Assembly (NCBI GenBank): GCA_900088475.1
Contig: FLMG01001544.1
Coordinates: 15,450-79,449 of the forward strand
Origin: Hyphochytrium catenoides
Taxonomy: Eukaryota > Protista > Hyphochytriomycota
Length of the DNA: 64,000 nucleotides
Direction of reading: 5' to 3'
The notes below the pieces were generated by a model. That model made no database searches. It was given only the letters and a program-made list of their open reading frames with translations, and was not told the origin of the DNA. A program made the translations under genes and the position numbers. Positions 13,142 to 61,000 of this stretch are shown here, piece after piece (the first letter of the stretch is position 1; every line of letters begins with the position of its first letter).

Positions 13142-13306
13142 AGATTGGCTTAGTATTTCTAATACTAGAACCCGAATAGCAGGCCGCATAGAATAAAGAC
13201 TGTCAATATTTGAAATATATCCCATAGGCCGAAGGGATGTGTGCCAGAGATCTTGGTTCGCACGGCCCGAGGCGCACTGCCAGAGGGGCTGCTTCCTCTC
13301 GATGTG

Positions 13307-16070
13307 ATGAAGCTTGGTAAGAAGCGGCACGACAGCGGAGGGGAAGAGACAACAGGCGAAGAGACAAGGAAGGTATCTGGAGGCAGCAGAGCCGGGTGGC
13401 CTCAGGAGAGCTGGCTTGAGCACATTCCAGGGTCTATCAGCCTCAGTGAGAAGGGATATATGGGTAATAACATGGTGCTCACCTCCCCGATAGCTACGTC
13501 CGCTCAACGCCTGGGGCCACATCCTTCCTATGGGACATCCCGGCATAGCCTCCGTAATGCACGTGAGGAGGTTGCCTCGCTCATCAAGCCATCCCCTGGT
13601 TTGTCAAGTTTACAATCAAAGGATGAGAGCGATGGGCAGCGCCAACGCCGCGCCTTCATAGTATCTCTTATTGCACTGTGTGCTGTAACGATCCTTCTGT
13701 ACCTCTGTCATTCTGAAGGCTTGAAGGGAGCCAATGACATAGAAAGCCAGGTCTTGAATCTTGCGACAAAAGGCGATGGACAGAATAGTGACCAGGAGCT
13801 TGGGCGGGTCGACTTCCCAGGGAGAAAGGATCTCATTCGGCACCTACCTGGAGCCCCCGCTGGTTATCATTCAGCCCAATTCAGCGGCTTTCTACACGCC
13901 TCGGGAGGGAGGAACATCCACTACTGGCTGGCAGAGAGCCAGTCCAGGCATCCTGACGCTGACCCGGTTGTCGTCTGGCTCAATGGAGGCCCGGGAGCCA
14001 GCTCCCTAGGCGGTCTGCTCTATGAAAACGGCCCCCTTACGATTCTCGATGACGGCCAGACCTTGGTTAGGAACCCTTTTACCTGGAACAGACGGGCCAA
14101 CGTTCTCTATCTTGAGTCTCCATGCGGCGTAGGGTTCAGTTATCAAGATGATGGTGACTATGAGGATGATGACTTGAGCCAAGCTCGTCATAACTATGCG
14201 GCGCTAGTGGACTTCTATCGAAAGTTCGCTCACCTTAAAGAGAATGGGCTGTACATCACAGGAGAGAGCTACGGAGGAGTTTATGTCCCCACGCTCGCCA
14301 TGGAAATCGTGGAAAGGAATGAAGAGAGGAAGAGAGAGAAAGGCAGGGAACGGGCAGGGACAATGTGGATGAACCTGAAGGGTTTCGCCGTCGGGAACGG
14401 CATAAACGAGTTTGTCTTTAGCTCGATGTTCCCCTTCGCGTACTACCACGGCCTGATTAGCTCCAGGCAATATGAAGCCTTCAAGACCGCCTGTCCTAGC
14501 ATCAAGGTATCCTCTACTTTCTCTTCCTCTCACCTCAGCCGTAACCTTGAGCCGCCTTCTAAGCCTTAGACTCTCATCCAGTTGTCCGATCTCTCTCTTA
14601 ACCTTGGAACAGAACCTCTTAGCCGAAGCCTCACCTTCTCCCAACTGCTTGCTGTCTCTATCTGTTCTGAACTAGGAGCGAACTAAAACTCCTCATCAAA
14701 GCGATGCAAGATGTGCTCAGGTGCAGATGGAAATCTTCATCCAAGCTTACACGTCTCACATCAACATGTACGATATCTATAGAGATTGCTGGGGTGGATC
14801 CCCCTTGGCTGCGCCGGGCAATCCTCCTTCCTTTTCCTCACAGTCATCCACATCCTCTGAGACTGCTGGAACAGGAAGTAGTGGATCAAGAGAGGTACTA
14901 AGGAAGAGACTCGCTCTCACTCCTGTTCCCATCGCCATGTGCATCAATAGCACTGCAGCCCAGTACTACTTCAACACTCCAGAGGTGCGGAAGGCCATAA
15001 ATATCCCTTCAGCTGCTGGACACTGGTCTGCAGTGACAATGACAAACGTCTCCGCTATGGGACCCTTCAGAGTGCCTCATCCGCTCAATTATGCTCGGAC
15101 CCTGAACAACGAAGTGACAACCCTCTGGAGACAATTGCTGGAGAAGGGAATAAAAGGCCTGATCTATAATGGTACACAAGGACCCTGCAGATTTGCCAAT
15201 GGCGATGTGTTATACTGCTTATCAGCCGGGTTCTCGTTTCTCTCACTTGCTTGCTTTAGCTGGTCCAATCGTCTCCCTAACTAGTACTCCACTACGTTGC
15301 CCTTGCAACTCAGATGAGGTCTGCATCTTTCCTTATTCTCTTGTCAGATAGTTCACCAGAATGGCCTTAGCTTCAAAGTGTCAACATCAGGAGTCTGGTT
15401 GTTTGTTCGTAGCTTATCAGCCTTCTCTCTTCCTTGGGTTCTAGCGCGTTTCACTATCAAATACTATTGGCCTCAGCCGCTTACCCTCTTGTTCTTCATG
15501 TCGCTGCGTTGTGATTCCAGGGGACACCGACTTGATGTGCAACTTTCTAAGCGGTGAATGGGCGGTAGAAAGCCTAAACCTGACAGAGAAGGTAGCCTGG
15601 TCACCTTGGAACATCGATGGCTCCCAACAGTCTGCGGGGTTCATGAAGGAGTTTGAGGAGGGGCTGACGTTTGTCACGATTAAAGGGGCAGGCCACATGG
15701 TAAGGCCTTACCTCACCTATTGTTGCTTGACCAAGCGGTCACAGGTGCCTGGTTGTCTATGAGCGTAGAGGTATTCCGGCTCGGCTGTAATCTCTGCATG
15801 TGGCAAGCTCAGAGGAACTTGTATTGCTTCACACAGAATCTTCCCGCATCTTCCCGGCTAAATGTTAACAGTGTATTCTCTCCTCTTTGACAGGTTCCCC
15901 AATGGCGTCCAGCAGAAGCGCAGTTCATGATTGAGCGCTTTCTCCTCCGGGACCCGCCCCATCAGCCATGGACTGCCAGTGATCCGCAAGTAAAAATGCC
16001 AGGTGATGGGAGCAGGGTGGAGGCACAGAAGTTGAGAACAACAGCAAAACAGAATGCTGGCCCTCCCTAA
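13307..16070 (+). CDS. Serine carboxypeptidase, family S10, with predicted type II membrane anchor
   Basis: WLNGGPGASS, ANVLYLESPCGVGFSY, catalytic Ser GESYGG, Asp GDTDLMCN, His GAGHM|VP. Hydrophobic segment AFIVSLIALCAVTILLYLC precedes the catalytic domain. Start could be 13307 or 13460. Confidence 0.95.
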
Positions 16071-28078: not shown

Positions 28079-31439
<3,361 letters not shown>

Positions 31440-41833: not shown

Positions 41834-44800
41834 CTAGGGATCTATCGCTAGCATGAGGATAGGAGAAGTCCTCGGTACCTCTGAGGCCTCAGCAGAGAGT
41901 CCAGCAGGTCGGTCAGCCTGCGTGCCGGAGGTTGACACATCGGAAGCGAGTGTCAAAGGAGACCGCAACCTATATCCAGCAAGGAAGTGACTTCCACTGC
42001 TCCCTCCTTGTTGGGCGCCGATGACAGCTATCCAATACAGGACCTCAGTCTTTGAGGTACCAATTTCGAAGTGTTGCAATGGAAGGGTCTTTTGCCAGGC
42101 CTCAGTCGCATTGCGTTTCGCCAACAGCACGTTGAGATATGGCAACCACTCGCTCGTCTGGCCTCGCTTCTCGATAGAATTGGTAAGCAGGGTGTACTCT
42201 TCCTCTACAAAGCCAGAATCTAGCACCTCTAACGCAATCGGAGAGAATGGAATCAAGTTGGAGAGATGCACCGCCCATTTTGACTCACGAGAGCTATTCC
42301 TATGAGCGTAAACTCGAGTTGTTCCTACAGTTCCGGCCAGCCTTGCTGATTCGAAAACTCGCTCATAGATATCCTGGCCGGGCCTCATCTGCCAGTAGAG
42401 TTTGGCTGCATTGGCTTCCAAGGTGAACAATAATCTCCCTGTCTTCGAAATATGATCATCGGAGAGTACATGGCCTATCAGCGCGACACTGTAATAGGCG
42501 TGCAGGGCTTCCCCTATCCTGTCCTGCCATTTCCCGTTACCATCATCCAGCTGATGAATACCTGAGGACCAAGAATGGAAGTCGAACCAGGAGAAGTGCC
42601 GAGTGGTTGGGAAGAAGGGATCAAGGGGTGACGGATTGGCTATGTCTCGCACAAGGGATAGGATGGCGCCCTTATGTTCATGGAGGAATTCTGTATTGAA
42701 CCGACTGACAACCGCAGCCGCAAAGAGAACATAACCATACTGGAAGTGCTGTAGATCAAACGATGCGCGACGTTAGTTTGAACTGCCGGGAATGCCGTCT
42801 GATGAAAACGCAGGACAGATCTTGTCAGGGGAACCAATTAGGGGAAGAGAACAGACCCGGTATAATTTGGGCCCCTACAGTTATATAAGGTCGGGTGATG
42901 AGATGGATAACTTTGAACGAGCGAGGCAATGGGACAAGAGTGTCATACGAGACAAGAGGACTAAGTAGAAGACGAGCAAAGGAGGGCTTACATGATCATT
43001 GTACCAGCCGTTCCCTCCATCTCTCATGTCTCGTATCGCACGTGTAGTCTTTGTGCCTTGTGTGGTGCAGATACCTCCCCACACTATATCGTACACGAAG
43101 GTATTAGATGACCCGAGCCACTTGGACAGAACGCTCTCCACAGGAAGTAGGATTCTGTCTCTCTCTTTGTAGCTCCCTATTTTCTCTGCGACTAGGGCAA
43201 TACGTGCTTGCCGGGCAAGCTGCCGAGCTACATCATAGAGGTCAGACTTGGATCTGGCATGGCGAGGGTATGGGACATAATCGTCAATTGGTAGTTCCTT
43301 GTCAAGCTCGAGGGCAGCACGAAGTCCTTCCTTCCTGGAGAAAGAACGAAACAGTGACATAGCGCGACGTTAGAAACGGCCACCATAAATAACGAGGTGA
43401 TGATTAGTGACCCCGTCGAAGGGAAACAAGCTTTCCCCAGAGAGGAGTGGTTGTAAGCTAGAGATAGAGCATCAGAGTGGAATAACAAAAGCAAGACACT
43501 GACCTGTAACCATCTATCTCCTCCAAAGTAGACCATGTTGGGAACATGAGCTTGATGTTGAACTCCCAAGTGTCCCCAAGAACTGCCGTCATATTTCCCT
43601 TTAAACAGCGATGACCAAGTGCAGCCAAGACTCTAGGAGCTGCTGACGGCTGGTTGAAGTTATCATAGTGGTGGGGCATTGCTAGCATCAACAAATCTCC
43701 AACTCCTCTTACGGTGTACTCGAATCGCACTCTAGCATAGGTCTGGCCATTGTCCTCATAGTAGCCAGTGAGGAGCTTCCCCTTACTAGGGTAGGCATTG
43801 GAATACGTATCCAGCACACGTATTGCTCTACGCCTTTGCTCCACGGTGGAGCAATGAGGGACCACCGCAGCTCTGAGTATCCCGTCATAATAGAGGTGAG
43901 TCTGCAAGAAATATAGGTCGCCTTCTTCTCCCGAACCTACTTCTCTTCCGACTAGAAGGTTAATCTGCCTATGTGTGTACAGCAGCCAGGTCTGACCGTT
44001 ATCCAGGGCTATCTCAAATCTCATTCCATGCAAATGCACTTCTGAGTCAGAGAGATTCCGGATATCATGGCCGTTAACTGTTAGAAAGCGAGAATGGGAG
44101 GAAATTCTAGGCGTTGCCCGATGGTACTTGACGGTAATGTAGGGAGAGCCGCGGACCAGGTGGACGCGAAGAATGCCCGGTCCCAATAGCCCATTGTCGT
44201 GGGTGGTAAACTTAAGGTTGGTGGAAAGATGAGCCATCGCATAAACCCGCCGTTTCTTTATCCGTTCTATAGATCCCACCACTAGATCGCCGCTAAACTG
44301 TTCTATAACAGATTCGGAGGTAGCCACCCGCCGTGTGTTACCATAAGAGACTTGAAGTCCATTATTGGTACACCTAACAGAGTAGGGAGACACAGTGACT
44401 TCGCCTAGACCTACAGTCGACAGAAGAAAGAGACATTAAGAAGCCAAATAACTTGGAAAGAATATCACCTCTGCGAAAGTAGGATAACAGTAGTGACGAT
44501 AGCCCAGCCAGTGGGCTGGGGGAACATATCCGAACGGGCAGAGGAGCAGCAAATGTAGCGTACGGGAAAGGATACCGTCCTGGAGTGACAAGGCAGTAAT
44601 GCTGGGAGATAAGTTCAGCAGAAGGAGAACTTAAGAAAGGGGAGTGAAAGACGGAGAGATAAGACAAAGGCCCACGGTCACAATAGGTTCTTGCGCTTGA
44701 GAGGAGGCAGGTCTTCCCTGCTTCCCAGGCTTACCCGCGTTGGATCCATCCACCTGAGCGACAATGAAGTTGTTCCACCACATGTTGGTTGGAATGGGAA

Positions 44801-46853: not shown

Positions 46854-49800
46854 CTAGTTAGGCACGTCACCCGTGGAACCCTGACGAGGCATCACCGGGC
46901 CTGGCAAGGAGATCGGCGTCTCCACTCCAAAGCGTGCAACCTCTATCTCCTTCGGCTTGATAGTTGACTCTCTCTTTTTGTGCGGCCCCTTCGATGGAGA
47001 TGGTGGACCTCGCGCTTGATCCAATAAGACCTCCAACTGCCTCACAATCTCGGTGAAAGGCAATCTCTCATTCCATTCTGGCTTCCAGGTATTCTGGAAC
47101 AGGCTCTTCAAATCATCGGGCCAGGTGTCGACCAGGGGAGGCCGAAGATTGTGCTGAGTCACGCCTGCAACCACTTCCATCACTGTGAGCTCCTGGAAGG
47201 GTTCTGACCAAGTCATCACTTCCCATAGGATGATAGAAAAGGAGAAGATGTCACACCCGTACTGGTATCGTTGACCCGTAAGAACCTAGGCAATGCAACG
47301 GCGGAAGGTCAAACAATAAAGAGGGAAGGTGTCAGCTGAGCGTAAAGTGACGCTTCACGAATTGCTTGGATACAAAGGGAATATGAAGTAAACAGAGATG
47401 ACCAGCGCGGCTTAACACGACAAACAGGGAGACAGAAAACCTCTCACGTCTCTTCGTGGGCTCTGTCTGAAGAATTCTCGGACTCACCTCTGGAGCACAC
47501 CACAGGGGACTGCCGCACTGCGTCATAGTCTTCGTCGAGTCTGTGATGCGGCTCATGCCGAAGTCCCCAACTTTGGCCGTTAGATCTCTTTTAAGCCAGA
47601 CATTCTGACATAGCAAGAAGGTGTGAGGACTAAGAGCTTTTTGCCTCTACTATATTTCTTATCGGCGTCTGCTCTCGAGATTTCTCCGCTATGAGTGTGA
47701 CCTCTGCCAGACGGGATCCTCTCCAGTTATCTTTCCCCTACCTTCTTTCTCGCCTGCCCGTACCTGCACCGGCCCAAACCCTTATCATCATCGCCCCGTT
47801 CACTTACCTGGCTCTTCAGATCCCTATGGATGATTTCCTTCTGATGAAGGTATTTCATTCCCTTTGCGATATCCAGCCCTATACTGAGTCCCTTCATGTA
47901 GTGGTCTGGCTGAGGTCTCATCTGAGTATGATAAAAGTCCCACAGGCTGCCACCTTCCATCAGCTCTGTAGCAATAAGAAGCTTTGGTGGCTGTTCCAGG
48001 CTGCCAATAAGGGCTACTAGATTTGGATGGTCTAACTGTCTCATGATATTGACCTATAGGGAAGGAAAGGAGATGGCCAATCAGACCAAGGAAGCAATTG
48101 TTAGTAAGGACTTCGAAAAAGGGAGACCTAAGGTATCCAAATTAAAGGCAGACGACAAGGGCGGGGCGAACGAGACATCTCTACAAGGTTAGGTACTGAC
48201 AAGAAAGATTGTCAACGGGTGTCATAGATCACCGGCAAAAATAGGGAATACAAGGAAGAGATAGATAGCGTAGGCGGAAGAGGAAGAGGGATATGAGTAG
48301 GTCGAAATTCTTTATACGCCTGTTACCTCCTTATGGAACTCGTCCAGAATTTCTGTCTTCACTCCGTCAACAAAGAGCTGCTTCACAGCAACCTTAATCT
48401 GACCTTGGTAGATGCCCTCAAAGACAGTGCCTGACAACGCATCAAGAGGAAGGTGATGACTCGATACTAACACCGGGAGAAGAGGAAGATGACTGTTGTG
48501 GCAGAACAAGATTGAACTAGAGATAGAGAGGGGAAATGGCACACAACTTCACCTGAGGCGCCTTCACCAATCTTGTAGCCTAACTCTAAGTCCGCTTCGG
48601 AAAGGGTCCCTATAACTCGTTCCTCCTTTTCAGGGTTCGGTCCTTCCTTCACCGGGGCCTTCGGATAGACAACTAGCGATTCCCAGCCATCAACCCCTAT
48701 GAAGCTCTTGGCCATGCCGTCAATTTGCCTAATAATTGTCTTGAAGGTGGGACGGGCGTTGGGCCGCGGGTCCCAGCAAGCTTCCTGGAATAGATTACAA
48801 GAGAGATACCGAGAGTGGAGAGACGGAGACAGGGTCACCGTTAAAGGGTACGTTGTAACTAGACTGAGAGCGAACGCATAGTGAATTCGAAAAGCGATCA
48901 AGTGACCGCACGATGCATATAGTACTGAACGAAATAGAACAGGCTTACTGGAGGCACAAAGCTCCCGCAGTAGAATCGAAGCCGAGGATGGATGGATGGC
49001 CAAGTGGCAACAGCGACGAGACGTCAAGGCTGGAAGGTTTTTGCTCACCATCAGGCTCTTGACCGTGTTATAAGTTGGCCCCAAAATCTCAGCCTCTGCT
49101 ATTGGTTTCCCCTCCATTTTCAGCGCTAACAAGTCCAGTGGTCTGATACCTTTCATCACTTGAAGCGCAACAGCATCGCCTGGGATATCCTCGTACGGAA
49201 CCCGACGGAAGATGACTTCAAACATCACGATCCCAAAGGAGTAGACCTGGAGGACAAGATTTTAACGGGAGATATATTGCACATGCGTTGAAAAGAGAGG
49301 AAAGACGTAGAACCTAGAACGATAAGACATAGCACAACTGAAGAAAATGAAAAGGTAATTCTCAGAACCTATCCTTAGCTGACAGGAGGGGATGGTGGAC
49401 GACAATCATACAATGGAGAGCAAGAGAGAATAACCGCTGAACACTTTGCCAATCAGACTCACATCAGCCTGTTTTGTGCTTTCCTCTCCAGAGAAGATCT
49501 CAGGGGCTCCCCAGAGCAAACTGCCAACTGGGATCACTCGATTTTGCCCCTTCTTTTCTCTTTTAGTCAAAGTGTTGAGTCCAAAATCAGAAATCTTGCA
49601 CCTCCAGTTACTGTCCACAAGGACATTGGGCGTCTTAAAGTCTCCGTGAATGATTGGAGGGGAGTGCTCATGTAGAAAACCCATTCCCCTGGCTATATCC
49701 ATCAGAATATTGAAGATCATGGACCATTCCAATTCAAGCTTATTTCCAGAATGCAGCAGATTATAAAGAGAGCCTCGGCCGAGGAGTTCCATCACCAGTA

Positions 49801-52800
49801 AGGGCGGAGAGATGCAGAAGCCCATAAGCATAACCTGTGAGCGAGAGAGCAAATTTCGATAACGTTAATGGACACAATGAATAGAGATGAGGGACCCCCA
49901 TGGCTCTTGAGGAAGAGAGATGCAATTCAGATAGCTCAAGGATACGAAAAGACGCGTGGGAGCACGGACATTCACGGAGCGGGGTATTAAATCGCAAAAG
50001 AGCTTGAAGTGTGTAGAGAGACGATTCGGGGTTATGGAAGTGGTGACAGAGAAGGCCTCACGATATTAGGGTGATGCAGCTCTGCCATAGTTGCAACTTC
50101 GGAGCCAAAGCTCTCCATCACTTCCTCCCCAATCGAGGAACGGAGCTTCTTGATGGCGACTGCAGTGTGCTTGTAGGTTCCCTTCATGACCTCACCATAG
50201 CTACCGGCACCCAAAGACTGAAAAATTTCAAGCTCACTGCAATAAAGTGAGAGAACGGAGAGAAAAGGGCAACGGAGAGAGGTCATGGCGGGTAATGACC
50301 AGGATTGAAGAAAAGAAAGGGCGGTGCTATGGACAACGGCCCCTTAGAGACTCGTAAGCAGCGGCGCAAAAGGCTAAAGACGTAGCTAGTCTTGAAGACC
50401 GAGGCGAGGAATGTGCTAGTCATAAAGCAATCGTCCACCTAGTATCCTAACCACGATATCTGCTTCACCTAGCCAGTCCCCACAGCTTTTGACCTACCTG
50501 TATCGGATCTGATAGGTCTTTGACACAGCCAAGACCTTCTTAGCTATTTTTTCTCCGTATTTGAGAACCCAGAGCTTTGGGAAAATCAAAGTGCCAATCA
50601 CACTGATGGTACCCCAGATTACGAGCACGCAGGTGATCAAATAGCTTGCGCGGGGCCGGAGTTGACAACCGAAGACGGCAAATTGTCCGAATAGAGCCGT
50701 AATGACGAAATTATACACCGTAAGAAGCAAGTTCCGGTCGATTGGGACGGCTCGATCTGCTTGGTAGGTAACATAGGCTAGGGCCAAGAGCAGCAGCGCC
50801 TTCGCTGTAACAGCTAAGATGTAAGGCACCCCCGCCGAGCAAACGTCCTCTTCTATCACGTAAACTGATTGCAGGTTAGGAATAGGCTCCGAAATCAAGG
50901 GAGATCCAAGTTGATAAGCTATGAAGAAGAATATGTCAAAGACAACCAGGCTGAAGACCAGAAAGTTGTTTAGGCCGTTCCCATTCTTTACGGCAATCTC
51001 AAACGTTCGATCCACTCTAATGAGGTCATGGATAGTTCTTCTTCTCTCCTCTTCGGTCTGGTTCTTTTTGGGGGCCGGGCTGACTACTCCCCACTTTGGA
51101 GCGGAACCTATAAGGCTGTGATGCATGAGAATGAAGCCCCCAACAATGAAGTCCCCAGCAATACAGAGAAAGAGAGGACGAATGGTGCAGAGGAGCGATG
51201 TAGGTTCCCCTGCGTTGATGAAGATAAACACCATGGCGATGATGCAGCCAATGGTAATCTGGGTTAGATGAGCTTGATTGCATCCCGCCCATCCAGGCAA
51301 TCGCCAGTAACGGATAATGCCCACCAGAGCAACGAGTAGTACAAGTAGAAGAGTAGCGGCGACAGTAGAGAATAGAATGGCAGGGATGGAGTTGATGGGG
51401 ACATAGGAGCACTCAATGGCATATGAAGACTTTTGATCTGGGTAGCATGAAGCGTTATCTGCCCCGTGGTAAGAGAGCAGAACCCGCCTCCTGACGTGAG
51501 CGTCACAGGGAGCGAGCGACACAGAGTACGAAGAAAGACTGCAGAACGGCCCTGCAAGGAGCACGAAGAAAGAGTAGGGATGAGTCTCGTGAACTGGCTG
51601 ATTCCACGTAAAGTAGAGGCCCCATACAAGGCTGGGTGATTGTCGTCAACAGCAAGAAAGGAAGCTCAAACAAAGAAAAGAAGCTAACAGCAAGATAGAA
51701 AAGCTGACACCTCCACAACAGGAGAAAAATGAGCGAAGAAGAGAGTTCGAGTGGCGGCGGGGAATCATATGAGCAAAATAGACCACAGTAAGGAATCGTC
51801 CATGACAGGAGCAATACGTGAGAGTGTGTGCCATGAGCGGATGAAAAAGGAAGTAGGGGCTTGGTTTGACCGAGGTTGGTCCAGGACTTACTTGACAGTG
51901 CGGAGCAGTTGGCTTCCAGATTTCCCACAGAGGTGAACGCACGGGCTACGGCGTGGCGACGGACTTCGGAGTCTGCCTTATAACAGATGGGGGAGAGAGA
52001 CAACCGGATCAGTGACGTTGCAGAGCAGTTGACTCCTGTCACTCGTTGATAGCGGCTACGTGGAAAGAAAAGTCAAGGTCGATTAGATTGGGCAAAAGAC
52101 TAAAGCTGGCTTATGAAGTCGGTGCACAAGTAAGCGCGGCGCTTTCGAAAACGGGTCAGATGAAAGAAAGCCTCTGAATGGGGGTTGAACACAAAATAAC
52201 GAAGAGAATTTCATGTAGGGTATGGGTGTTATATCCTATAACAACCCACCTAACTGAGAGAACAAAAAGGTTGCTCTCTCCCACTTGCTTCAAATCCCAT
52301 GTGGCTCCTCCCTTGAGGCAACGTCCTGCTCCTTCTTGAAGAGCTCCAGAAGCTTCAGACAGCTGCAAATGTCCTCCTTCAACCTTAAGGGCACCCTTAG
52401 CCTGTAGAGCTAGAGCCAGATCAGGCTCCACATCTCCTAGGGATAGAGGGGGGGACTCTTTGTGCAGTGGTTGTTCACGCCTGAAAGAAGAACGTAGGTA
52501 GGAGGCACCACAGAGATTAGTGAGGAAGAAACAGGATAACAAAAGTCACGGAAAAATAACGGAGAAGGTGTAGGGCTGTCAAATCTTTCTATAGGGCTTT
52601 CTTCCCTCTCATTCTACGACGCTTACCAGTCAGGGTGATAGACTAGTGAAGCCTCATTCGTAAGTAGGAAGCACAAGGGCAACGAACTTTCTTGAGTTGC
52701 GAGCAACGTAGACGATGATGAACAGCGACTGACATCCACCAGAGGCGAACCCGTCACAAAGAAAGACCATGTTTGGGTGTATGTAGCCACCCCAATGATG

Positions 52801-52999
52801 GAAGGCTCATACCCTACGGCACGAGCCCACACCGGGCGACTAATTGATACACTTCATACATGGGAGATGATAAGTGATTCGGCGAGAAAGGAGTGAGGAC
52901 AAAGGAAGATAGCAATAGAGAGCATAGTCAGGTGGGAGATTAGATTTTGGTCTAAACGATAGGGACTATGCTTTGAAGGAGAGTTGCTGCTTGCCTCTC

Positions 53000-53060
<61 letters not shown>

Positions 53061-56000
53061 TATACACACACACGCTCTTTCTCTCTCTCCAGCTTTGCGT
53101 GACCTCGTGCTTCTTACATTGGGACTTGCATGGTCGAGTCATAGGTCGTCGGCGTAACTTGGTAGCTGTACTTGGAAGCGTATCGAAGTGCCTGGCGATA
53201 GGCTGCAGAGGATGGAGGCGGTATTTATAGCAACAACGTGAGTTAGAAACGGAACCTAAGATTTTCCTAGGGCAGAAGATAAGGCCGATATCTGAGTAAC
53301 AAACTTCAAGCACGATGTAAAGCCTGCAAGATGTTCACGTAAGGATAGGAATGGTAACTCACCTCTTTCTTCACGCGGATCCCCTAAACAACCATTCGGC
53401 ATGGAGTGCCGAGGCAAAACACAGGTCGGAGCAACAGATGGGAGGTGAGACAATCAGAAGGATAGATAATTAGCCATCAGGGCACAGGTCTAGCAATGCT
53501 TTCGGCTTACAATAGACAGATTTGGTCACTAGTCCAGGATACTGGAAGACGACACCGCCTGTAGTTGTCAGAGAGAAACGAAGAAATTCGTCCAGATCTC
53601 CAGCCGCTATTGCTGCCTTCGCTGTGGGATAGAGAGATGACAGGAGGCGTGCATCCTCTAAGCACTGGGAGCTTAAGCCTGGGTTCACACTGAAGCCTTG
53701 ACTATTGATCAGCTGATGCAGGTTCTTTACCAAATCGCCCGGTGAAAGCTGTATGTACAACCCACATTTAGCGGACGCATAGGTTTGGGAGTACGGGTAA
53801 GAGACAACAAGGCTGACCTCAGCGCTTGAGAGAAAAGGCAACCGTGATAGGCCCCAAAGGAGACAGAGATACATCGAACTAGACCAGCAAGAATACGAAT
53901 AGTGCGTCCTACCTCCTTTCTTATGCCAACTTCCTGTGGGATTCGGAAGCAGTATTCTCCAAAGGACACGGCGGGCCAGGAAGAAGCAGTCCCCAACTTG
54001 AGACGTCGCGGCTCGCAGATGCATGCTCCGGAACAGCTTGGACATGTGCTATCTGCCCTACAGTCTTGGAAAGCTGCGTCCCCGACTTGACAGTTATTAA
54101 GGTTGTAGACAACCTGGCTTGGCACAGAGTACGAGTTATGCAGACGTGCTTGTCAGAGGGCCGAATACATAATCAACACAAATAGAAAGCAATGCGCCAT
54201 TTGTCAAGCTCTGGAGATGTCAGGTTCAATCGGAGTTTCCAATCGCGGCCCTGCCTTCCAGTTCTTTCTCCCCTGTTTTTCTCTTCACTTAAAATGGTCT
54301 TTGTCTCGTCCTCTTTCTCACCTTGTCTGTCGGGAGACTGCTCAATAACGGACTCCTGGAGCCTGCCCCTTTGGCTTCTACAGGGACTAAAGAAGAGAGC
54401 TCCCCATCATAGAGTTGAAGGTTGGTTCCCAGCAATGTCTGGCCTGCGTCTACATTCGCGCACAGTGAAGGCCAGAGAAGCAGTCAGCGACGCCAAACAC
54501 GCTAAAACTTAAGGCTGCCAAGTATGAGAGATGGTATTGACAGAAGAACAACATTAAACATTCGTCTCTGCTGAAGGGCAGGACAAAGACGTCAAAACTG
54601 CTATCAAGACTATGGGACAAGAGAAGAGAGAGGAATGCAAGGCAGGGGAGTGTTGGGAAAACTGTATACACTGGCTGAATGACTAACTTACCCGTAGCCA
54701 AAGCCATAGGGCGCACTCTGTAGACAGCCGGTCTGACGGAAACGACGCCCACAACATATTCTGATTGTAGAATCGAAATCCGCTTCCATACATAAAGCTT
54801 CTCTCCGTTGCTAGAAGACTGAACTTCACTTTGGGCAGAGATGAGCAAAGGGAGGACGGAGGACGCAAAGCCCCCTTCCACCTCAAGCTCAGAGATATGA
54901 ACGCCCAGCGAGTTGTTTGACAAGCGAGGGTGATAGAGCGCAGTTCCTTGAGTAAAGACAAGCTTAGAAAGACTATCTAGAAGGGTTAATCCAATGCTGG
55001 CCGCGCCATCGATGAGGTGTACAGAACTCGGGTAGAATAGGTGGGTAAGATTGAAGATATATCCTGACAGAACGTGAAGGTGTCGAAGAGGGCCAGATAG
55101 ATAGAAGCGGGAGAAGTAGGTCTGACAGAAAGAAAGGGAGGATAAGAAGCAGGCCACGAAGTACTCAAGCTTTGTCAACTATGGTCATAATGGGCATCTA
55201 CCTGAAGGGAGGAGGACGAAGGGGTAGGAGGATTGGAGAGCGTAAGGATGGAGCAGCTGCAAGAGCGGGATGATAGAGATATCAAGTCCAGCAACGCCCA
55301 GAAAGGCTGAAGTTCCAGGATCTTTCACTTGCGCCAAAACCGACAAGAAGGAAGCTTCGCTTTCCGTCTCCCTTCGCATGTCCCCTCTTAGGCCATTTCC
55401 TACTACTATATCGGCCTGTTCTTCTTCTTCTGACCTCGCAATTCTCAGTGCATAATCCACTGAAGATAGCACAGAGGAAGCGGACTGCAACGGGTAGAAT
55501 TGGCCCTGATTTGAACAGGATAGACGTTGAAGGAGAGGCAGCTCTGGACTTTCTGGATGACTGAATGCGAATATGTGGGCTTTCTGTGTGTTTGCCCCTG
55601 CCACGGAGGCAAAGAAGCTCATTTCTGAGAGTTGTTCTCTCTCGCTAGCTTCAAAGTCAAAGAGACGCTTTACCGTGGAGTTACCAGCTACCAGGGTGAT
55701 AACTGGGGAGTAGGGAGAAGAGTGAGAGTCAAGAAATTGTGCTATGCTCCTGAATAGGAATGGAAGACAGGTGCTCAGAGGCTTAGGAGAGATATCTTGG
55801 TGTGGTAAGGTACGGATGTACTTGATGGCCTTCCACTTGGTGCTACCAGGGTAAAGTCCCAGTACGTTATCGTCCAAAGCTATAGAGGACATATTGGAGA
55901 CTGTGCATGTCAGGTTGCGAAAAACAGGAGAGCATCCAGTCTCACTGCTGTCTAGTCTCAAAATCGCATAATAGTCCTCGTTCCCCAGAGTTGCTAGGAG

Positions 56001-57418
56001 CTTTGCGGCTGTCTGCCTTACGGTTTCCCAACCCGCCTGAGTCTGTGAATCCAAAGCCAAAAGCATCACCTTTCGCCCTGTCACTGCCCTGACATACCAT
56101 GCGCTTTCCCTATGGTCGTAGGAGTCCAACGCAGACGTGGCAGTAGAGGAAGAGGGTGAAGGAGAAGCGATCCAAGGTGAGGCTGGAAAGAAGCGCAGCA
56201 CTCCATTTTTGCTGGCAAAATAGGCGAAAGACGCGTAGGGATCTCTTTCTATTGTTGCTTTCATGGCAGACTCTGCCAGGAAGGAGGCACCAAGATCAGC
56301 CGTGACATCCTTTTCAACAGCTTGGCGTAAGCCTGCGATCTGAACGCAGATAAAAAATCCGGTGTGTGAGAAGGTTACGCATCAGCTCAATACGTAAGAA
56401 AGCCAGATGGGAGCATTTGGTGGTACCCAGAATGGAGCACGTCTTTGTCTGAATATGGCAAACATTCAGCGAGAATTAAGTAGGTAATAGGGTTACCGAG
56501 CAGCTAAGAAAAAGCCAGAAGTGAGCACAACGGGCCTTAAGCTAAATCTCTGTTCAGGATGGCACTGTCTTCTACAGGCGAAAGTTGGAACAATAGGAGT
56601 AGTAGAAACAGCTTGACGTAAGAAAAGCGTTACCATAGTAGCGCTGGCGTTCGAGACTAAGAGATCGCTAATCCCAGGGCGAGGGCTTAAAGAAAGAGTA
56701 CCGGCCACCAAGCTGAGCGCCGATAGACTGGCCATAGGGACCAAGGCCTCTGATTGGTAGTTCTCGTAAGCTGTTTGCACAGCCTTGACATAGGCCTATA
56801 CATGTAGACAGTGCAGTTTTGCGAGGGAGAAGTTAAATTGAAGAATATAGGAAGCTTCAGTATGTCAGCCTGCGGAAGACCTAAATAGCACCCACGGCTC
56901 CACCGAGGAGCAGTGCCGAGGTAAGGACGAACAATGGAGGGACAGTACTGATATAAGGGGAGCATTAGACCTAGAAGATAGAACTAGAAGACAGTAGGCA
57001 AGTGCATTAATGGCAGCAAGGGTTCGTGGATGTGAAAGTATATGCGGAAGAGAAGTAGGGTTAGGTGACAGTGAAGGTTAACCTTGAGAGCTTCTGCTTT
57101 CTGGGTAAGCAATCCATTGACTTTCTCAATGATGTGAACCAAGATTTCGGACGGAGACTCTGTCACTGGCTGGTACGGGTGTGAGTTCAGTACCTATGCA
57201 GAAACGGAGAGTTAGGGGCTAAGCAGGAACGCCAGCTACCACTTTTCGGGGTTCCCGTGCACCTGCTCAAAGTCTACTGCCTTTCCCTTGGTGTTGATGC
57301 GATTTGTGATAAGCGAATCAACATCACTGACTAATGAGGCACTAGACACAACCGAATGGACGGTTAGCAGCAAGCAGAAGCTGCTCCAAAGCAAAGCTCT
57401 CAATGCTTCCCCTCCCAT
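46854..57418 (-). CDS. Receptor kinase: signal peptide + alpha2delta/CACHD1-like vWA-Cache ectodomain + class C GPCR-like 7TM + two tandem TKL kinase domains
   Basis: Signal MGGEALRALLWSSFCLLLTVHSVVSS; DPYASFAYFASKNGVLRFFPASPW...YDHRESAWYVRAVTGRKVMLLALD (alpha2delta-like); seven hydrophobic segments at ~50570-51385 ending TLIFPKL; kinase 1 GAGSYG/VAIK/HGDFKTPN/DFG/APE; kinase 2 GEGASG/VAVK/HRDLKSQN/DFG/APE. All on one strand with splice signals between, but not every junction was phase-checked. Confidence 0.8.
52995..53090. repeat. Compound (TC)n(AC)n intronic microsatellite
   Basis: ctctctttctctctttctctctct...ctctctcacacacacacatatacacacacacgctctttctctctctcc. Confidence 0.9.
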
Positions 57419-58061: not shown

Positions 58062-61000
58062 ATGCAGCTTCAGGAGGCAACGGCGCTCATACAACACGCA
58101 GAGCAAAGTCAAGCTGCTGCTGCTGAACGCGAGTTGCAGTCAGCTAAAGAAGGTGATCACTGGTCATACGGAGTGCCATAACTATGGACCAAACCAGCTA
58201 CTTCTCCTCCTCCCTTATCCGTACATCACTTATACATCACATGTTGGTACAAGAGGCTTTCTTACGATAACGACGTGACACTGCCACAAATTTCTCTCGG
58301 TCCTGTGTGTCACTTCTTCCCGAGTCGCTCACTAACTCTTTGATAGAGCAATTTACTTACTGACCATCATCTGGATGTAGGCTAGGCTTAGTGCAAAACT
58401 CTCAAGGGAAGTGGAGCCAGCCAATAGCCAGCTCTAGCATGGTAATGGGACGGCGGGTTGGTCATGAGACATACCTGAATCTCATAACCTCCCTTTCTTA
58501 GTCCTGATTATAGCCAACGCTTGAGGGAGGCAATGAATATATTGTTCCACGAGAATCCCAGAAGAACCCGGACTTAAGGCTGCAGCTTCGCTCCGTGGGA
58601 GATTACTAGCCTTCCAAAATGGGAACTTCTCAGTAGCCGCCACAGCGAAAAGAGCTCCATTATGAGAATGTACTGTTGGACACCACTCCAACAGCTTTGG
58701 CCCTACCCAGCACAGGTCTTTGATGCTCATCTAGCTCATGCATAAGACTAGGAATCGATTGTAGGTGACACAACAATTGTTTAACAGGGCTTTCTTGCTG
58801 TAAGCACCTGCTTAAATATATTTACCTATACCAAGCTTGATTATGTGACCCCGCTATAGCGCTGAGGTAGCGAGAGCTGCTTGTCAGCCTAGACTTACGC
58901 CTCAAAGCTCGATTGGGTCAACATTGTCGGTGATGTAAAATGGTCTGCCCAGGAAGGGCCTGCGCGGCTTATTCAATGATGTCCGCATTCATTTCTCTCC
59001 TGCAGCTTCCTCAAGAGTTCCGNNNNNNNNNNNNNNNNNNNNNNNNNNNNNNNNNNNNNNNNNNNNNNNNNNNNNNNNNNNNNNNNNNNNNNNNNNNNNN
59101 NNNNNNNNNNNNNNNNNNNNNNNNNNNNNNNTCATCAATTCTGTTGCCCATTTCATCTAGTGAGGATATGTTAAGGAGAACACTTTTGCATCTGACTGCA
59201 AAAAGACGCGCGACTCTAACACTGAACGCATTGCAAAGGATGGAGGGGAAAGGATATTTCTTGTCAAGATCCCGTCTGACATATTGGTGAAACGCTGTTG
59301 CTGTAGACATCAAGAGGATCAACAGCGAGCGTTAACATGACTATTCGAGACTTGCAAGAGCAAACGCACTCCGTACCATTTGTTCCAACAAAGTTTGGAC
59401 CTTAGCCAAGATAATCGGTTAACACCAGCGAATAGGACGCATGCGCCCGCCCAAAACAAAATTTCCCTTAGTTGTGGTCTATAACAAGCAAGATAAAGTG
59501 CTAATCCTCATACCACTGCCGTAAGGTCCTGAGCCGTCTGGTCTTCTTCATGAGAGGGCTTGTCTTGAGTTGGCTGGCTCTGTGGGCAAAGAAGGGGACG
59601 GATTTAGAAGGGCTATTCAGTACCTGACGGCGACCAGCCAGGTGACCTGCGCAACTCTCTGGGGCTCTTACCATCTTGCCTTTGAGGTGTATTTCACTCT
59701 CTGCGTTACCCTTTTAACTCTTCCGTCGAGGGTATCGCGAGGTGATGTTCTGATAGAGGCTTGGCGAGACACTTCGCTGGCATTAAATCTCAAGTGAGCC
59801 TTCCACGCACGCCGCGGTGTATGATAGTCGTTGCTCTGCCTGGCATGGACTTCAAGAAGCTGTGGGGAAGCAAGCTTGAGCACTCATCAAAAGTCAAAAG
59901 AAGCTTCCACAGTTCACAGAGCTTCACCTGTTGTACGCGTTACAGCTGCGTGTGTCTGTTATATGATAGCGGTTAGTGGCTTCTAGACCCTACCACTCTA
60001 TCCTAAGATTGTACTCGACAATTGCTTGGTACTAAAAGGTAGGGCTATAAAAAGAGGCTTAGTTCTTAGGTAAAAGCCCCTGTCTAAGATTATACTACTT
60101 ATTAGGGTTTGACAAGTAAAGCTATCCAATGCTCCTGAGATTGACGCGTTTAAGGTAAGCCCTCGTAGTTGATGTTGAACCTACCCTCAATAGCCCTCAG
60201 GGCATCTGCAGTGTACAAGTGACCTGAAGCCCCACTCCTGTCCAGAAAGGTCAGCCTTCATGCGCAGACTAGAGACAGACGCAGCATCACCCAGCAACAG
60301 AAAAGTCCACGAACAGGAGTTGATGCTAAGTAGTATCGAAACACCACGCCCAGTTTAGAAGCACAGGACCTCCTGAAGAGGTGACATCCGCCATCGTCCC
60401 TGGCCACCATGGAGATTGAGAGAGTTCATTACACTTATGTTAGCTGAGTCGGCTCTTGATGGCCCGTCCGTCAGAACACATTCCCCTAGGAGGTTATGTT
60501 ATCCCTAGAGCCCCCTAGTGACGAGGCTCGACTGAGCCTCAGTTCTACTACTGTCAACTGTGCTGGACTGATGGAGAGAGGTACACCCTGAGTTTCGTAG
60601 AGATGTCACAATGGAGAGACTCTAATCTGGACGTCCGGGAATAGGTAATGGCGGTCTAGTCGGTCTCTCCTGGGCACCTCAAGAGGGAACCACCTGGAGC
60701 AGAAAGAGGAATGCCAAAGAGTTAGACCTGCATTCCAGGGTTCTCGATAAAAGGAAAAAGCATTTGATCGAAGCGTGAGTCGGTCAACACTATGCCAGCG
60801 CAAGCAAATCAGAGAAATAGTCTCCACTCATCCACTCCATCTTCGTTTCTCGCTTTAGGACACAATTAAACACTTCGGCCATGCTACCTCTTCCTCCGCA
60901 TCATGTGCGGAGCGCTTACAGCTCTACAGAGGAGCATGCGAGTCAGGAAGGAGGCGATGATGGTCCAGCTCCAATGTCTCTGGAAGGGGATGCCGCAGAG

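What the first reader, a model, noticed from the sequence alone, without database searches (positions are those of the whole stretch)
46854..57418. Single-chain receptor: alpha2delta-like vWA/Cache ectodomain + class C GPCR 7TM + two tandem TKL kinases
Seen: over ~10.5 kb on the minus strand, a signal peptide is followed by an ectodomain collinear with the Cav alpha2delta/CACHD1 family: RDPYASFAYFASKNGVLRFFPASPW, YDHRESAWY, vWA ending LQRLSCSNQGQFY, FLGVAGLDI, a second Cache GGVVFQYPG, CFLLTNEASLVYHP, LGDVEPDLALAL and LKQVGESNLFVLSV. Next come CSYVP and seven hydrophobic helices with class C features (Cys at the start of TM3 LLCTIRP, ECL2 Cys EDVCS, KALLL in TM5, TVYN in TM6, IFPKL in TM7), then two complete TKL kinase domains. 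Established: alpha2delta proteins are GPI-anchored or single-pass channel subunits; class C GPCRs mostly use Venus-flytrap ectodomains; GPCR-enzyme fusions including GPCR-TKL are known from oomycetes. Inference: a self-contained sensor-transducer-kinase that may bypass G proteins. I do not know this four-part combination as described.
Basis: partly seen in the sequence, partly recalled or inferred. Interest (0 to 1): 0.88.

Follow-up and report, generated by a model that had tools for sequence, protein, structure and literature searches.

The report
Alpha2delta-like class C receptor with two kinases
An intron-rich protist gene most likely encodes one very large membrane protein that joins a calcium-channel-alpha2delta-like sensor, a class C GPCR-type seven-helix domain and two TKL kinases, a domain combination I did not find described, though no transcript data yet prove it is a single chain.

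Summary
On the minus strand, 57418-46854, I built a 21-exon gene model with only GT-AG introns, encoding about 1,954 aa. It has a signal peptide and an ectodomain whose large exon matches only Cav alpha2delta-1 among solved structures (E 1.4e-11). It also has a Cys-rich stalk and seven helices whose AlphaFold model matches only class C GPCRs in the top 50 PDB hits. Two TKL kinase domains follow, both closest to CTR1 and both keeping the catalytic residues.

One-chain support:
- The introns at the domain borders are short (340 and 261 nt) and have strong splice sites.
- There is no Met between the ectodomain and TM2.
- Homology to protist 7tm_3 receptors begins at the first residue of the 7TM exon.
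- Kinase and Cache motifs span splice junctions.
- Contigs from DNA runs reproduce the arrangement.
- Differences between runs are 14/17 synonymous in exons, and all eight 1-nt indels lie in predicted introns.

Weak points:
- No RNA run was listed, and no orthologue was found.
- An in-frame ATG inside the 261-nt intron permits a separate kinase gene.
- The second Cache half has only weak support.
- MIDAS and the amino-acid motif are degenerate.

GPCR-TKL fusions, Cache-bearing class C receptors and protist alpha2delta-like proteins are each known, so I call this a new variant of a known kind. Earlier unchecked scan notes list other GPCR-TKL fusions in this genome.

The parts
57263..57418 (-). 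Exon 1: start codon at 57418 and a predicted signal peptide (about residues 1-27)
   Evidence: An in-frame stop lies two codons upstream of the ATG, followed by a hydrophobic N-terminal stretch. The signal peptide is inferred from composition.
56634..57193 (-). Exons 2 and 3 (57193-57083 and 56795-56634): N-terminal helical region of the ectodomain
   Evidence: Frame-compatible GT-AG introns. No database hit for these pieces alone. Placement is moderately confident.
55202..56339 (-). Exon 4 (379 aa): end of VWA_N / first Cache module (PASPW, YDHRESAWY), VWA domain with degenerate MIDAS (DSQTQ at 56051-56037), and the start of the post-VWA Cache part (FLGVAGLDI)
   Evidence: PDB phmmer hits only Cav alpha2delta-1, E 1.4e-11. 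Pfam VWA_N is sub-threshold. Atlas neighbours are alpha2delta/CACHD1/VWA_N clusters.
54692..55063 (-). Exon 5: continuation of the first Cache-like module
   Evidence: Strong splice sites (GTAGAT...CTGTCAG and donor GTAAGT) and an open frame. No Pfam or PDB hit alone.
53511..53956 (-). Exons 6 and 7 (53956-53913 and 53748-53511): least certain part of the model, second Cache-like region ending in GGVVFQYPG. The 735-nt gap upstream (54691-53957) may hide further exons.
   Evidence: The exon 6 acceptor is weak (GAG). I prefer the exon 7 acceptor at 53749/53748 because a 1-nt indel at 53795 in run X3 lies upstream of it. Language-model top hits for the longer model-A version of exon 7 (53817-53512) are CACHD1-like fragments, score 0.94 with low recognition.
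53118..53383 (-). Exon 8 (53383-53363, 21 nt) and exon 9 (53202-53118). Together with the end of exon 7 they spell the Cache-type motif W|DPREER|AYRQAL.
   Evidence: Manual splice reading with strong sites (GTAAGC, TTTAG/GTGAGT, CTGCAG). The motif comparison rests on general knowledge of Cache domains.
51892..52839 (-). Exons 10-12 (52839-52627, 52480-52250, 52055-51892): C-terminal ectodomain (CFLLTNEASLVYHPDW, LGDVEPDLALAL, NLFVLSV, Cys-containing tail)
   Evidence: Frame-consistent strong splice sites. Exon differences between runs are mostly synonymous, and a 1-nt indel lies in the intron at 52916. No Pfam or PDB hits alone.
50498..51551 (-). Exon 13 (350 full codons): about 50-aa Cys-rich stalk (to CSYVP), then seven TM helices of class C type with a 33-aa insertion in intracellular loop 2, then about 25 aa after TM7
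   Evidence: Pfam 7tm_3 E 3.7e-7. Nearest relatives are 7tm_3 proteins. Alignment A1 shows the conserved stalk Cys, the TM3 Cys, the ECL2 Cys and the TM7 PK motif. AlphaFold plus Foldseek gives class C GPCRs as the top 50. All 7 listed differences between runs are synonymous.
48731..50236 (-). Kinase domain 1 (exons 14-17, first part): GAGSYG, VAIK, HGD...N (non-RD), DFG, APE
   Evidence: Pfam PK_Tyr_Ser-Thr. Best solved relative is CTR1, E 4.5e-22. The motifs HPNI|VMLMGF and AD|VYSFG span splice junctions.
46854..48589 (-). Kinase domain 2 (exons 17 end to 21), then about 60 aa of tail and the stop codon ending at 46854: GEGASG, VAVK, HRDLKSQN, DFG, APE
   Evidence: Pfam PK_Tyr_Ser-Thr. Best solved relative is CTR1, E 9e-16. 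HRDLKSQ|NVWL and APE|VL span junctions. It is 31% identical to kinase 1.
51552..51891 (-). Intron 12 (340 nt, GTAAGT...TTGCAG): border between ectodomain and stalk/7TM
   Evidence: It is open in the exon 12 frame, giving a hydrophobic read-through that stops near 51506. It carries a 1-nt indel at 51725 in run X2, as expected of non-coding DNA.
50237..50497 (-). Intron 13 (261 nt, GTAGGT...TTGCAG): border between 7TM and kinase 1. It contains an in-frame ATG at 50286. Retaining it would end the protein one codon after exon 13.

Best explanation
One gene encodes one receptor kinase of about 1,950 aa. After a signal peptide comes an extracellular alpha2delta/CACHD1-type module: a VWA domain inserted into a Cache domain, followed by a second Cache-like region. 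A roughly 50-residue cysteine-rich stalk links it to a class C-type seven-helix domain. Only about 25 residues after TM7, two Raf/CTR1-like TKL kinase domains begin, and both keep the catalytic residues.

Shown here: the domain identities, their order, an open and splice-consistent frame, purifying selection on the exons, and the same genomic arrangement in contigs from several DNA runs.

Inferred mechanism: a ligand or partner bound by the Cache/VWA ectodomain repositions the stalk and the 7TM domain, probably within a dimer, as in class C receptors. This brings the tethered kinases together so that they phosphorylate each other, the receptor loops or substrates. The output would therefore be direct phosphorylation, with or without G proteins. 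The canonical alpha2delta ligand sites are not kept: MIDAS is DSQTQ, and the Arg of YxxxxRxWY is Ser. The ligand is therefore unlikely to be bound in the gabapentin/leucine manner.
For: - Gene model: 21 exons, all GT-AG introns, ATG at 57418 to the stop at 46854.
- Ectodomain: only alpha2delta-1 among PDB sequences, E 1.4e-11, with alpha2delta/CACHD1 neighbours in the Atlas.
- 7TM: Pfam 7tm_3 E 3.7e-7. The only relatives among 1.84 billion representatives are 7tm_3 receptors. The model has seven helices and its top 50 PDB matches are all class C GPCRs. The TM3 and ECL2 cysteines and the TM7 PK motif are conserved.
- Kinases: TKL group, with catalytic motifs present in both.
- One chain: the border introns are 340 and 261 nt, inside the gene's intron size range of 69-340 nt with one of 735 nt. 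No Met lies between model-A residue 795 and TM2, so the 7TM part cannot start on its own. Homology to Pythium, Chloropicon and Dermamoeba receptors starts at the first residue of exon 13. Kinase motifs span four junctions.
- Genomic contigs of runs X1 and X2 cross kinase exon 14, intron 13 and the 7TM exon without a break, and the X2 contig continues through intron 12 into the ectodomain exons.
- 14 of 17 listed exon differences between runs are synonymous (binomial P about 5e-6 at an assumed 28% synonymous expectation). All eight 1-nt indels fall in predicted introns.
Against: - No RNA run was listed, so no splice junction has been seen.
- No orthologue or same-architecture protein was found. 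The length filters of the large protein search would have hidden proteins of about 2,000 aa.
- An in-frame ATG at 50286, 17 codons upstream of the first kinase exon, would allow a separate kinase gene. Retention of intron 13 would give a kinase-less receptor.
- Exons 6 and 7 and the 735-nt gap are uncertain.
- The second Cache half has no significant sequence hit.
- AlphaFold on the VWA exon alone failed, with pLDDT 35.
- Pfam 7tm_3 and VWA_N are both below their curated cut-offs.
Confidence: 0.72

Rival explanations
1. Two genes. An alpha2delta-like class C receptor ends at the TAG immediately after exon 13 (stop codon at 50496-50494). A separate cytosolic tandem-TKL kinase starts at the in-frame ATG at 50286.
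For: The ORF 50286-50032 starts with ATG and reads straight into the kinase G-loop exon. Exon 13 is followed one codon later by a stop if the intron is not removed. No RNA data are available.
Against: - The 17 codons after that ATG are a pyrimidine tract ending in TTGCAG, which is a typical acceptor.
- Only about 210 nt would be left for a 3' end plus a promoter, whereas I saw no convincing coding sequence for more than 1 kb on either side of the gene.
- The spliced reading places YQIRYSELEI before the G-loop. This resembles the IGTLSEADLEL that precedes the G-loop of kinase 2.
- Earlier unchecked scan notes list other 7TM-TKL fusions in this genome.
Confidence: 0.13
2. The ectodomain is a separate alpha2delta/CACHD1-like single-pass protein made by reading through intron 12, whose translation is hydrophobic. 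The 7TM-kinase part would then be another gene.
For: The frame of exon 12 stays open through the whole 340-nt intron, encodes a hydrophobic stretch and stops near 51506. This would mimic the membrane anchor of alpha2delta or CACHD1.
Against: - T-rich introns translate into Phe/Leu/Ser-rich peptides by chance.
- Run X2 has a 1-nt deletion at 51725 inside this stretch.
- The 7TM frame has no Met before TM2 and has a stop upstream of the acceptor.
- Homology to other receptors' Cys-rich stalk starts exactly at the acceptor.
- The donor GTAAGT and the acceptor TTGCAG are the strongest in the gene.
Confidence: 0.04
3. The locus is a decaying or unexpressed gene, or my fused model is an artefact of ab initio exon chaining.
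For: No RNA run was listed and no orthologue was found. A dynamic-programming chain can almost always find some open path, as shown by the different paths.
Against: - About 5.9 kb of coding sequence has no internal stop or frameshift.
- Exon differences between runs are 14/17 synonymous, and all indels avoid the exons.
- Conserved motifs are completed across the junctions I chose by hand.
Confidence: 0.06

Closest known systems
Voltage-gated calcium channel alpha2delta subunits and CACHD1 (dCache_1 with inserted VWA, then a second dCache_1)
   Same: This is the only solved family hit by the large ectodomain exon (E 1.4e-11). It shares the PASPW and YD...WY stretch before the VWA domain and a degenerate MIDAS as in CACHD1 (the CACHD1 point is from general knowledge). 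Language-model neighbours are alpha2delta/CACHD1 for two separate exons. Such proteins are reported in most eukaryotic supergroups (PMC8915833).
   Different: The C-terminus is not a GPI anchor or a single helix but a Cys-rich stalk, seven helices and two kinases. The amino-acid motif Arg is Ser. There is no evidence of any link to a calcium channel. The second Cache half is not detectable by sequence searches of single exons.
GPR158 / GPR179 (animal class C orphan receptors with a Cache-type ectodomain instead of a Venus flytrap)
   Same: The logic is the same: a Cache-superfamily sensor on a class C 7TM with no Venus flytrap. GPR158 appears among the fold matches (rank 48) and among the language-model neighbours.
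   Different: There is no match to the GPR158_179_EC Pfam family. The ectodomain here is the VWA-containing double-Cache type. GPR158/179 have no kinase and signal through RGS7-Gbeta5.
GPCR-TKL 'bigrams' of oomycetes, amoebozoans, ciliates and acanthoecid choanoflagellates (PMC5784254, PMC6033456, PMC10463195, PMC12716839)
   Same: A 7TM receptor with a C-terminal TKL kinase in one predicted polypeptide. None has been functionally characterised. Multi-pass and dual-kinase transmembrane kinases are pictured for Phytophthora infestans (PMC3019232).
   Different: Those papers, as far as I read them, describe no large alpha2delta-like ectodomain on these receptors. I did not test whether their 7TM domains are related to this one. 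Here the 7TM is class C-like and there are two kinase domains.
Protist class C-like receptors with a conserved Cys-rich stalk (Pythium insidiosum, Chloropicon roscoffensis, Dermamoeba algensis proteins P0002, P0147, P0133, P0006)
   Same: These are the closest sequence relatives of exon 13, with invariant stalk cysteines, C.Y.P before TM1, GEPT..LC..RP in TM3 and PK in TM7.
   Different: Their ectodomains are unrelated (beta-helix, bacterial solute-binding protein, or unannotated). They have no kinase. They lack the 33-aa insertion in intracellular loop 2.
Streptophyte dCache_1AA-VWA Ser/Thr kinases (PMC8915833)
   Same: An alpha2delta-type sensor coupled to a protein kinase in one protein.
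   Different: These are known to me only from one sentence in that paper. No 7TM domain is mentioned there.

Membership tests
Cav alpha2delta / CACHD1 family | VWA_N / first dCache N-terminal module followed by a VWA domain, recognisable by sequence | tested here: met
   phmmer against the PDB finds only alpha2delta-1, E 1.4e-11, aligning query residues 36-157 with a second weak stretch at the end of the VWA. Atlas score 0.94 to VWA_N/VWA clusters. Pfam VWA_N alone is below its cut-off (21.8 against 34.7 bits).
Cav alpha2delta / CACHD1 family | Intact MIDAS motif DxSxS in the VWA domain (alpha2delta-1 and -2) | tested here: not met
   In the alignment, alpha2delta DVSGS aligns with DSQTQ. Both serines are replaced.
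Cav alpha2delta / CACHD1 family | Amino-acid binding motif YxxxxRxWY (PMC8915833) | tested here: not met
   Alpha2delta YDVRRRPWY aligns with YDHRESAWY, so the motif Arg is Ser. The second module reads YWDPREERAY in my splice model, which also does not fit the motif.
Cav alpha2delta / CACHD1 family | Second dCache_1 (VGCC_alpha2 region) after the VWA-bearing one | tested here: inconclusive
   Single exons give no Pfam or PDB hit. A language-model search with the model-A version of exon 7 (53817-53512) gives CACHD1-like fragments at 0.94, but with low recognition. The spliced protein could not be submitted to the profile or folding tools.
Cav alpha2delta / CACHD1 family | GPI anchor or single C-terminal helix, and association with a Cav alpha1 subunit | tested here: not met
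   In the preferred model the ectodomain continues into a 7TM domain. Channel association is not testable here.
Class C GPCR (Pfam 7tm_3) | Pfam 7tm_3 at or above the gathering score | tested here: not met
   30.5 bits against a cut-off of 33.5, E 3.7e-7, in two stretches. Alignment A1 shows a 33-aa insertion in intracellular loop 2 that may be what splits the match. I still treat the domain as class C-type on the fold and relatives tests below.
Class C GPCR (Pfam 7tm_3) | Seven-helix fold closest to solved class C receptors | tested here: met
   AlphaFold model with pLDDT 71 and pTM 0.69. The top 50 Foldseek PDB matches are all class C (mGlu, CaSR, GABAB, GPR156, GPR158, sweet receptor), with probability 1.00 and TM-score 0.42-0.57 normalised to the query.
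Class C GPCR (Pfam 7tm_3) | Conserved TM3 and ECL2 cysteines and the TM7 PK motif | tested here: met
   Alignment A1 with eight 7tm_3 proteins: the TM3 Cys is invariant (C121), the ECL2 Cys is aligned in the seven other sequences that cover it, and FPKL aligns with PK (PR in one sequence).
Class C GPCR (Pfam 7tm_3) | Nearest sequence relatives are family members | tested here: met
   Nine of the ten hits in the exhaustive search carry Pfam 7tm_3, eight of them above the cut-off. The sources name them family 3 GPCR or GABA-B-like.
Class C GPCR (Pfam 7tm_3) | Coupling to heterotrimeric G proteins | not testable with these tools
   This needs biochemistry.
GPCR-TKL bigram | 7TM and TKL kinase on one polypeptide | tested here: inconclusive
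   A 261-nt GT-AG intron joins them in frame. Genomic contigs confirm that they are adjacent. No transcript evidence exists, and there is an in-frame ATG in the intron.
GPCR-TKL bigram | Kinase domain belongs to the TKL group | tested here: met
   PK_Tyr_Ser-Thr scores higher than Pkinase for every exon piece. The best solved relatives are CTR1, RIPK2, Roco4, B-Raf, LIMK and TNNI3K.
GPR158/GPR179 | GPR158_179_EC ectodomain family | tested here: not met
   No Pfam hit to that family in any ectodomain piece. It appears only as a distant language-model neighbour at 0.69-0.75.

The most novel reading that the evidence does not exclude
This is a natural receptor in which an alpha2delta/CACHD1-type double-Cache/VWA sensor drives a class C seven-helix domain that carries its own tandem TKL kinases. 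It would show that the alpha2delta module, known in animals as a channel accessory, works in a protist as the ligand-sensing head of a receptor. It would also show that a class C 7TM can signal by direct phosphorylation rather than, or in addition to, G proteins. I did not find this architecture described in the literature I searched.
Probability: 0.5. Interest if true: 0.72.

Novelty: new variant of a known kind. Interest (0 to 1): 0.62.

Why it matters
If the single chain is real, three things follow.
- It links three well-studied modules that are not known to occur together. That makes it a tractable system for asking how a class C 7TM passes a signal to a covalently attached kinase. The reviews I read state that no GPCR-kinase fusion has been functionally characterised.
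- It gives the alpha2delta/CACHD1 ectodomain, whose ancestral function is unknown, a plausible ancestral-type role as a receptor sensor.
- It adds a lineage and a new ectodomain type to the repeated, apparently independent origins of GPCR-kinase fusions.

The practical value is modest until the transcript and the activity are shown.

Tried and rejected
- RNA evidence: no RNA run was listed for the 7TM exon. The runs found for a 6-kb stretch are genomic contigs with no joints.
- Orthologues or same-architecture proteins: none found.
  - The exhaustive search with the 7TM exon gave only ten weak hits, none better than E 1e-7.
  - Two searches of the 5.8-billion-protein collection with the VWA exon gave nothing. 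The length filter there excludes full-length alpha2delta and any 2,000-aa relative.
  - Two metagenome scans found nothing.
- AlphaFold of the VWA exon without an alignment failed (pLDDT 35), so I made no fold comparison for the ectodomain.
- Single small ectodomain exons gave no Pfam or PDB hits.
- Automatic exon chaining gave two different, partly wrong paths: skipped kinase exons and false introns inside the VWA exon. I replaced both by reading each junction by hand.
- My first version of exon 7 (acceptor at 53817) was dropped in favour of 53748 because of an indel in run X3.
- Lineage: a search with the neighbouring carboxypeptidase exon gave at best 42-56% identity, mostly to animals. That does not place the organism, so the lineage is undetermined.
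- The scan's earlier notes could not be matched by sequence.

Full report
**What is there.** The window is intron-rich eukaryotic DNA.

Two automatic exon-chaining runs gave conflicting paths, so I read each junction on the sequence. The result is a model of 21 exons with only GT-AG introns, running from the ATG at 57418 to the stop ending at 46854. It encodes 1,954 aa in the preferred version and 1,977 aa in the first version. Introns are 69-340 nt, apart from one 735-nt gap at 54691-53957 that may hide exons. Exon 6 and the start of exon 7 are the weakest points.

**Ectodomain.** The 379-aa exon 4 (56339-55202) hits 13 distinct PDB sequences at E about 1e-11, and all of them are Cav alpha2delta-1. 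The alignment runs from the PASPW stretch through the first half of the VWA domain, and a second weak stretch aligns at the end of the VWA.
- Pfam VWA_N is found but below its cut-off.
- A protein-language-model search gives VWA_N/VWA/alpha2delta/CACHD1 clusters at 0.94.
- In the alignment the MIDAS DVSGS of alpha2delta-1 corresponds to DSQTQ.
- In the same alignment the motif YDVRRRPWY corresponds to YDHRESAWY. The Arg of the YxxxxRxWY amino-acid motif defined in PMC8915833 is therefore Ser.

Downstream exons gave no Pfam or PDB hit on their own. The model-A version of exon 7 has CACHD1-like fragments as its two best language-model neighbours, with low recognition. My splice model assembles W|DPREER|AYRQAL across a 21-nt exon, which looks like the Cache 'DPR..R..Y..A' signature (from general knowledge). 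The N-terminal half is therefore alpha2delta-like by test. The C-terminal half is alpha2delta-like only by weak evidence. AlphaFold on exon 4 without an alignment failed (pLDDT 35).

**Seven-helix domain.** The whole stalk and 7TM lie in one exon (51551-50498).
- Pfam 7tm_3 gives E 3.7e-7, but 30.5 bits against a cut-off of 33.5, in two stretches.
- An exhaustive HMMER search of 1.84 billion representatives found only ten proteins at E up to 0.001. Nine carry 7tm_3, eight of them above the cut-off. They include proteins from Pythium insidiosum, Chloropicon roscoffensis and Dermamoeba algensis.
- The alignment shows invariant stalk cysteines, C.Y.P before TM1, an invariant TM3 Cys, an aligned ECL2 Cys and the TM7 PK motif (PR in one sequence). 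This protein alone has a 33-residue insertion in intracellular loop 2, which may be what splits the Pfam match.
- With that alignment AlphaFold gives seven helices at mean pLDDT 71.
- All top 50 Foldseek matches in the PDB are class C GPCRs.
- Homology to these receptors begins at the first residue of exon 13 and does not extend into the ectodomain. The alpha2delta-like head and the stalk/7TM module therefore meet at an exon border.

**Kinases.** Both domains match PK_Tyr_Ser-Thr better than Pkinase. CTR1 is the best solved relative of each, followed by other TKL kinases.
- Kinase 1 has GAGSYG, VAIK, HGD..N (non-RD), DFG and APE.
- Kinase 2 has GEGASG, VAVK, HRDLKSQN, DFG and APE.
- They are 31% identical, so this is not a recent duplication.
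- HPNI|VMLMGF, AD|VYSFG, HRDLKSQ|NVWL and APE|VL are completed across splice junctions, which supports the exon model in this part.

**One gene or several.** No RNA run was listed, so the argument is indirect.
1. The border introns are 340 nt (GTAAGT...TTGCAG) and 261 nt (GTAGGT...TTGCAG). Both are within the gene's intron size range and have the best splice sites in the gene.
2. There is no Met between model-A residue 795 in the ectodomain and TM2. The 7TM frame has a stop just upstream of its acceptor, so the 7TM part needs an upstream exon.
3. Contigs from DNA runs are collinear with the window. One from run X2 covers 50052-52902 in a single piece, so the arrangement is not an assembly artefact.
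4. Of the 17 listed single-base differences that fall in predicted exons, 14 are synonymous (P about 5e-6). All seven in the 7TM exon are synonymous.
5. All eight 1-nt indels fall in predicted introns, once exon 7 starts at 53748. One of them, at 51725, lies inside intron 12.

Two caveats remain.
- Intron 12 is open in the exon 12 frame and would encode a hydrophobic tail. The indel and the T-rich composition argue that this is chance.
- Intron 13 holds an in-frame ATG at 50286, which could start a separate tandem-kinase protein. If intron 13 were retained, the receptor would end one codon after exon 13.

I put the single chain at about 0.7.

**Comparison with what is known.**
- Alpha2delta-like dCache-VWA proteins are reported from nearly all eukaryotic supergroups and, in some streptophytes, fused to a Ser/Thr kinase (PMC8915833).
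- GPR158 and GPR179 are class C receptors with a Cache ectodomain (PMC11437087). PMC12716839 states that Cache domains were not detected in glutamate-type GPCRs of non-metazoan opisthokonts.
- GPCR-TKL fusions are known in oomycetes and amoebozoans (PMC5784254), in ciliates (PMC10463195) and in acanthoecid choanoflagellates (PMC12716839). None has been characterised functionally.
- Dual-kinase transmembrane kinases are pictured for Phytophthora infestans (PMC3019232).
- None of these sources, as far as I read them, describes an alpha2delta-type head on a class C 7TM with kinases. My literature searches for such a combination found nothing.

Each module and each pairwise idea is known. The four-part combination appears new.

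**Verdict.** It is best filed as a new variant of the GPCR-kinase fusion kind, with an alpha2delta/CACHD1-type sensor. Earlier notes of this scan list two other 7TM-TKL fusions and a 7TM-PI3K fusion elsewhere in this genome. I could not check them.

Noticed in passing
window 41837-44393, minus strand: The next gene downstream is a glycoside hydrolase family 81 (endo-1,3-beta-glucanase) split over at least two exons: N-terminal domain E 4e-33 and C-terminal domain E 1e-28.
   Followed up: partly
window 13241-14566, plus strand: Serine carboxypeptidase S10 (cathepsin A-like) exon, Pfam E 7e-70. The best database relatives are only 42-56% identical and mostly from animals, so they do not place the organism.
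   Followed up: partly
window 28082-31013, minus strand: PI3/PI4-kinase catalytic exon (E 3e-37) and a PIK accessory-domain exon. This matches an earlier scan note on a PI4KIII-beta gene in this window.
   Followed up: no
window 52988-53091: A long (GT)n/(GA)n microsatellite inside intron 9 of the receptor gene. Contigs of the public runs break there.
   Followed up: no
window 48000-53900: The three DNA runs differ from the window at roughly 1% of positions and by 1-nt indels, so they are different strains or haplotypes. This gave a small natural test of coding constraint.
   Followed up: yes
window 51891-51506, minus strand: Intron 12 stays open in the frame of exon 12 for about 130 codons and would encode a hydrophobic C-terminal tail. 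This could be a chance product of T-rich sequence or a possible single-pass isoform.
   Followed up: partly
window 59000-59499: G+C drops sharply to 0.35 about 1.6 kb upstream of the gene start, against about 0.50 elsewhere. I did not examine it.
   Followed up: no
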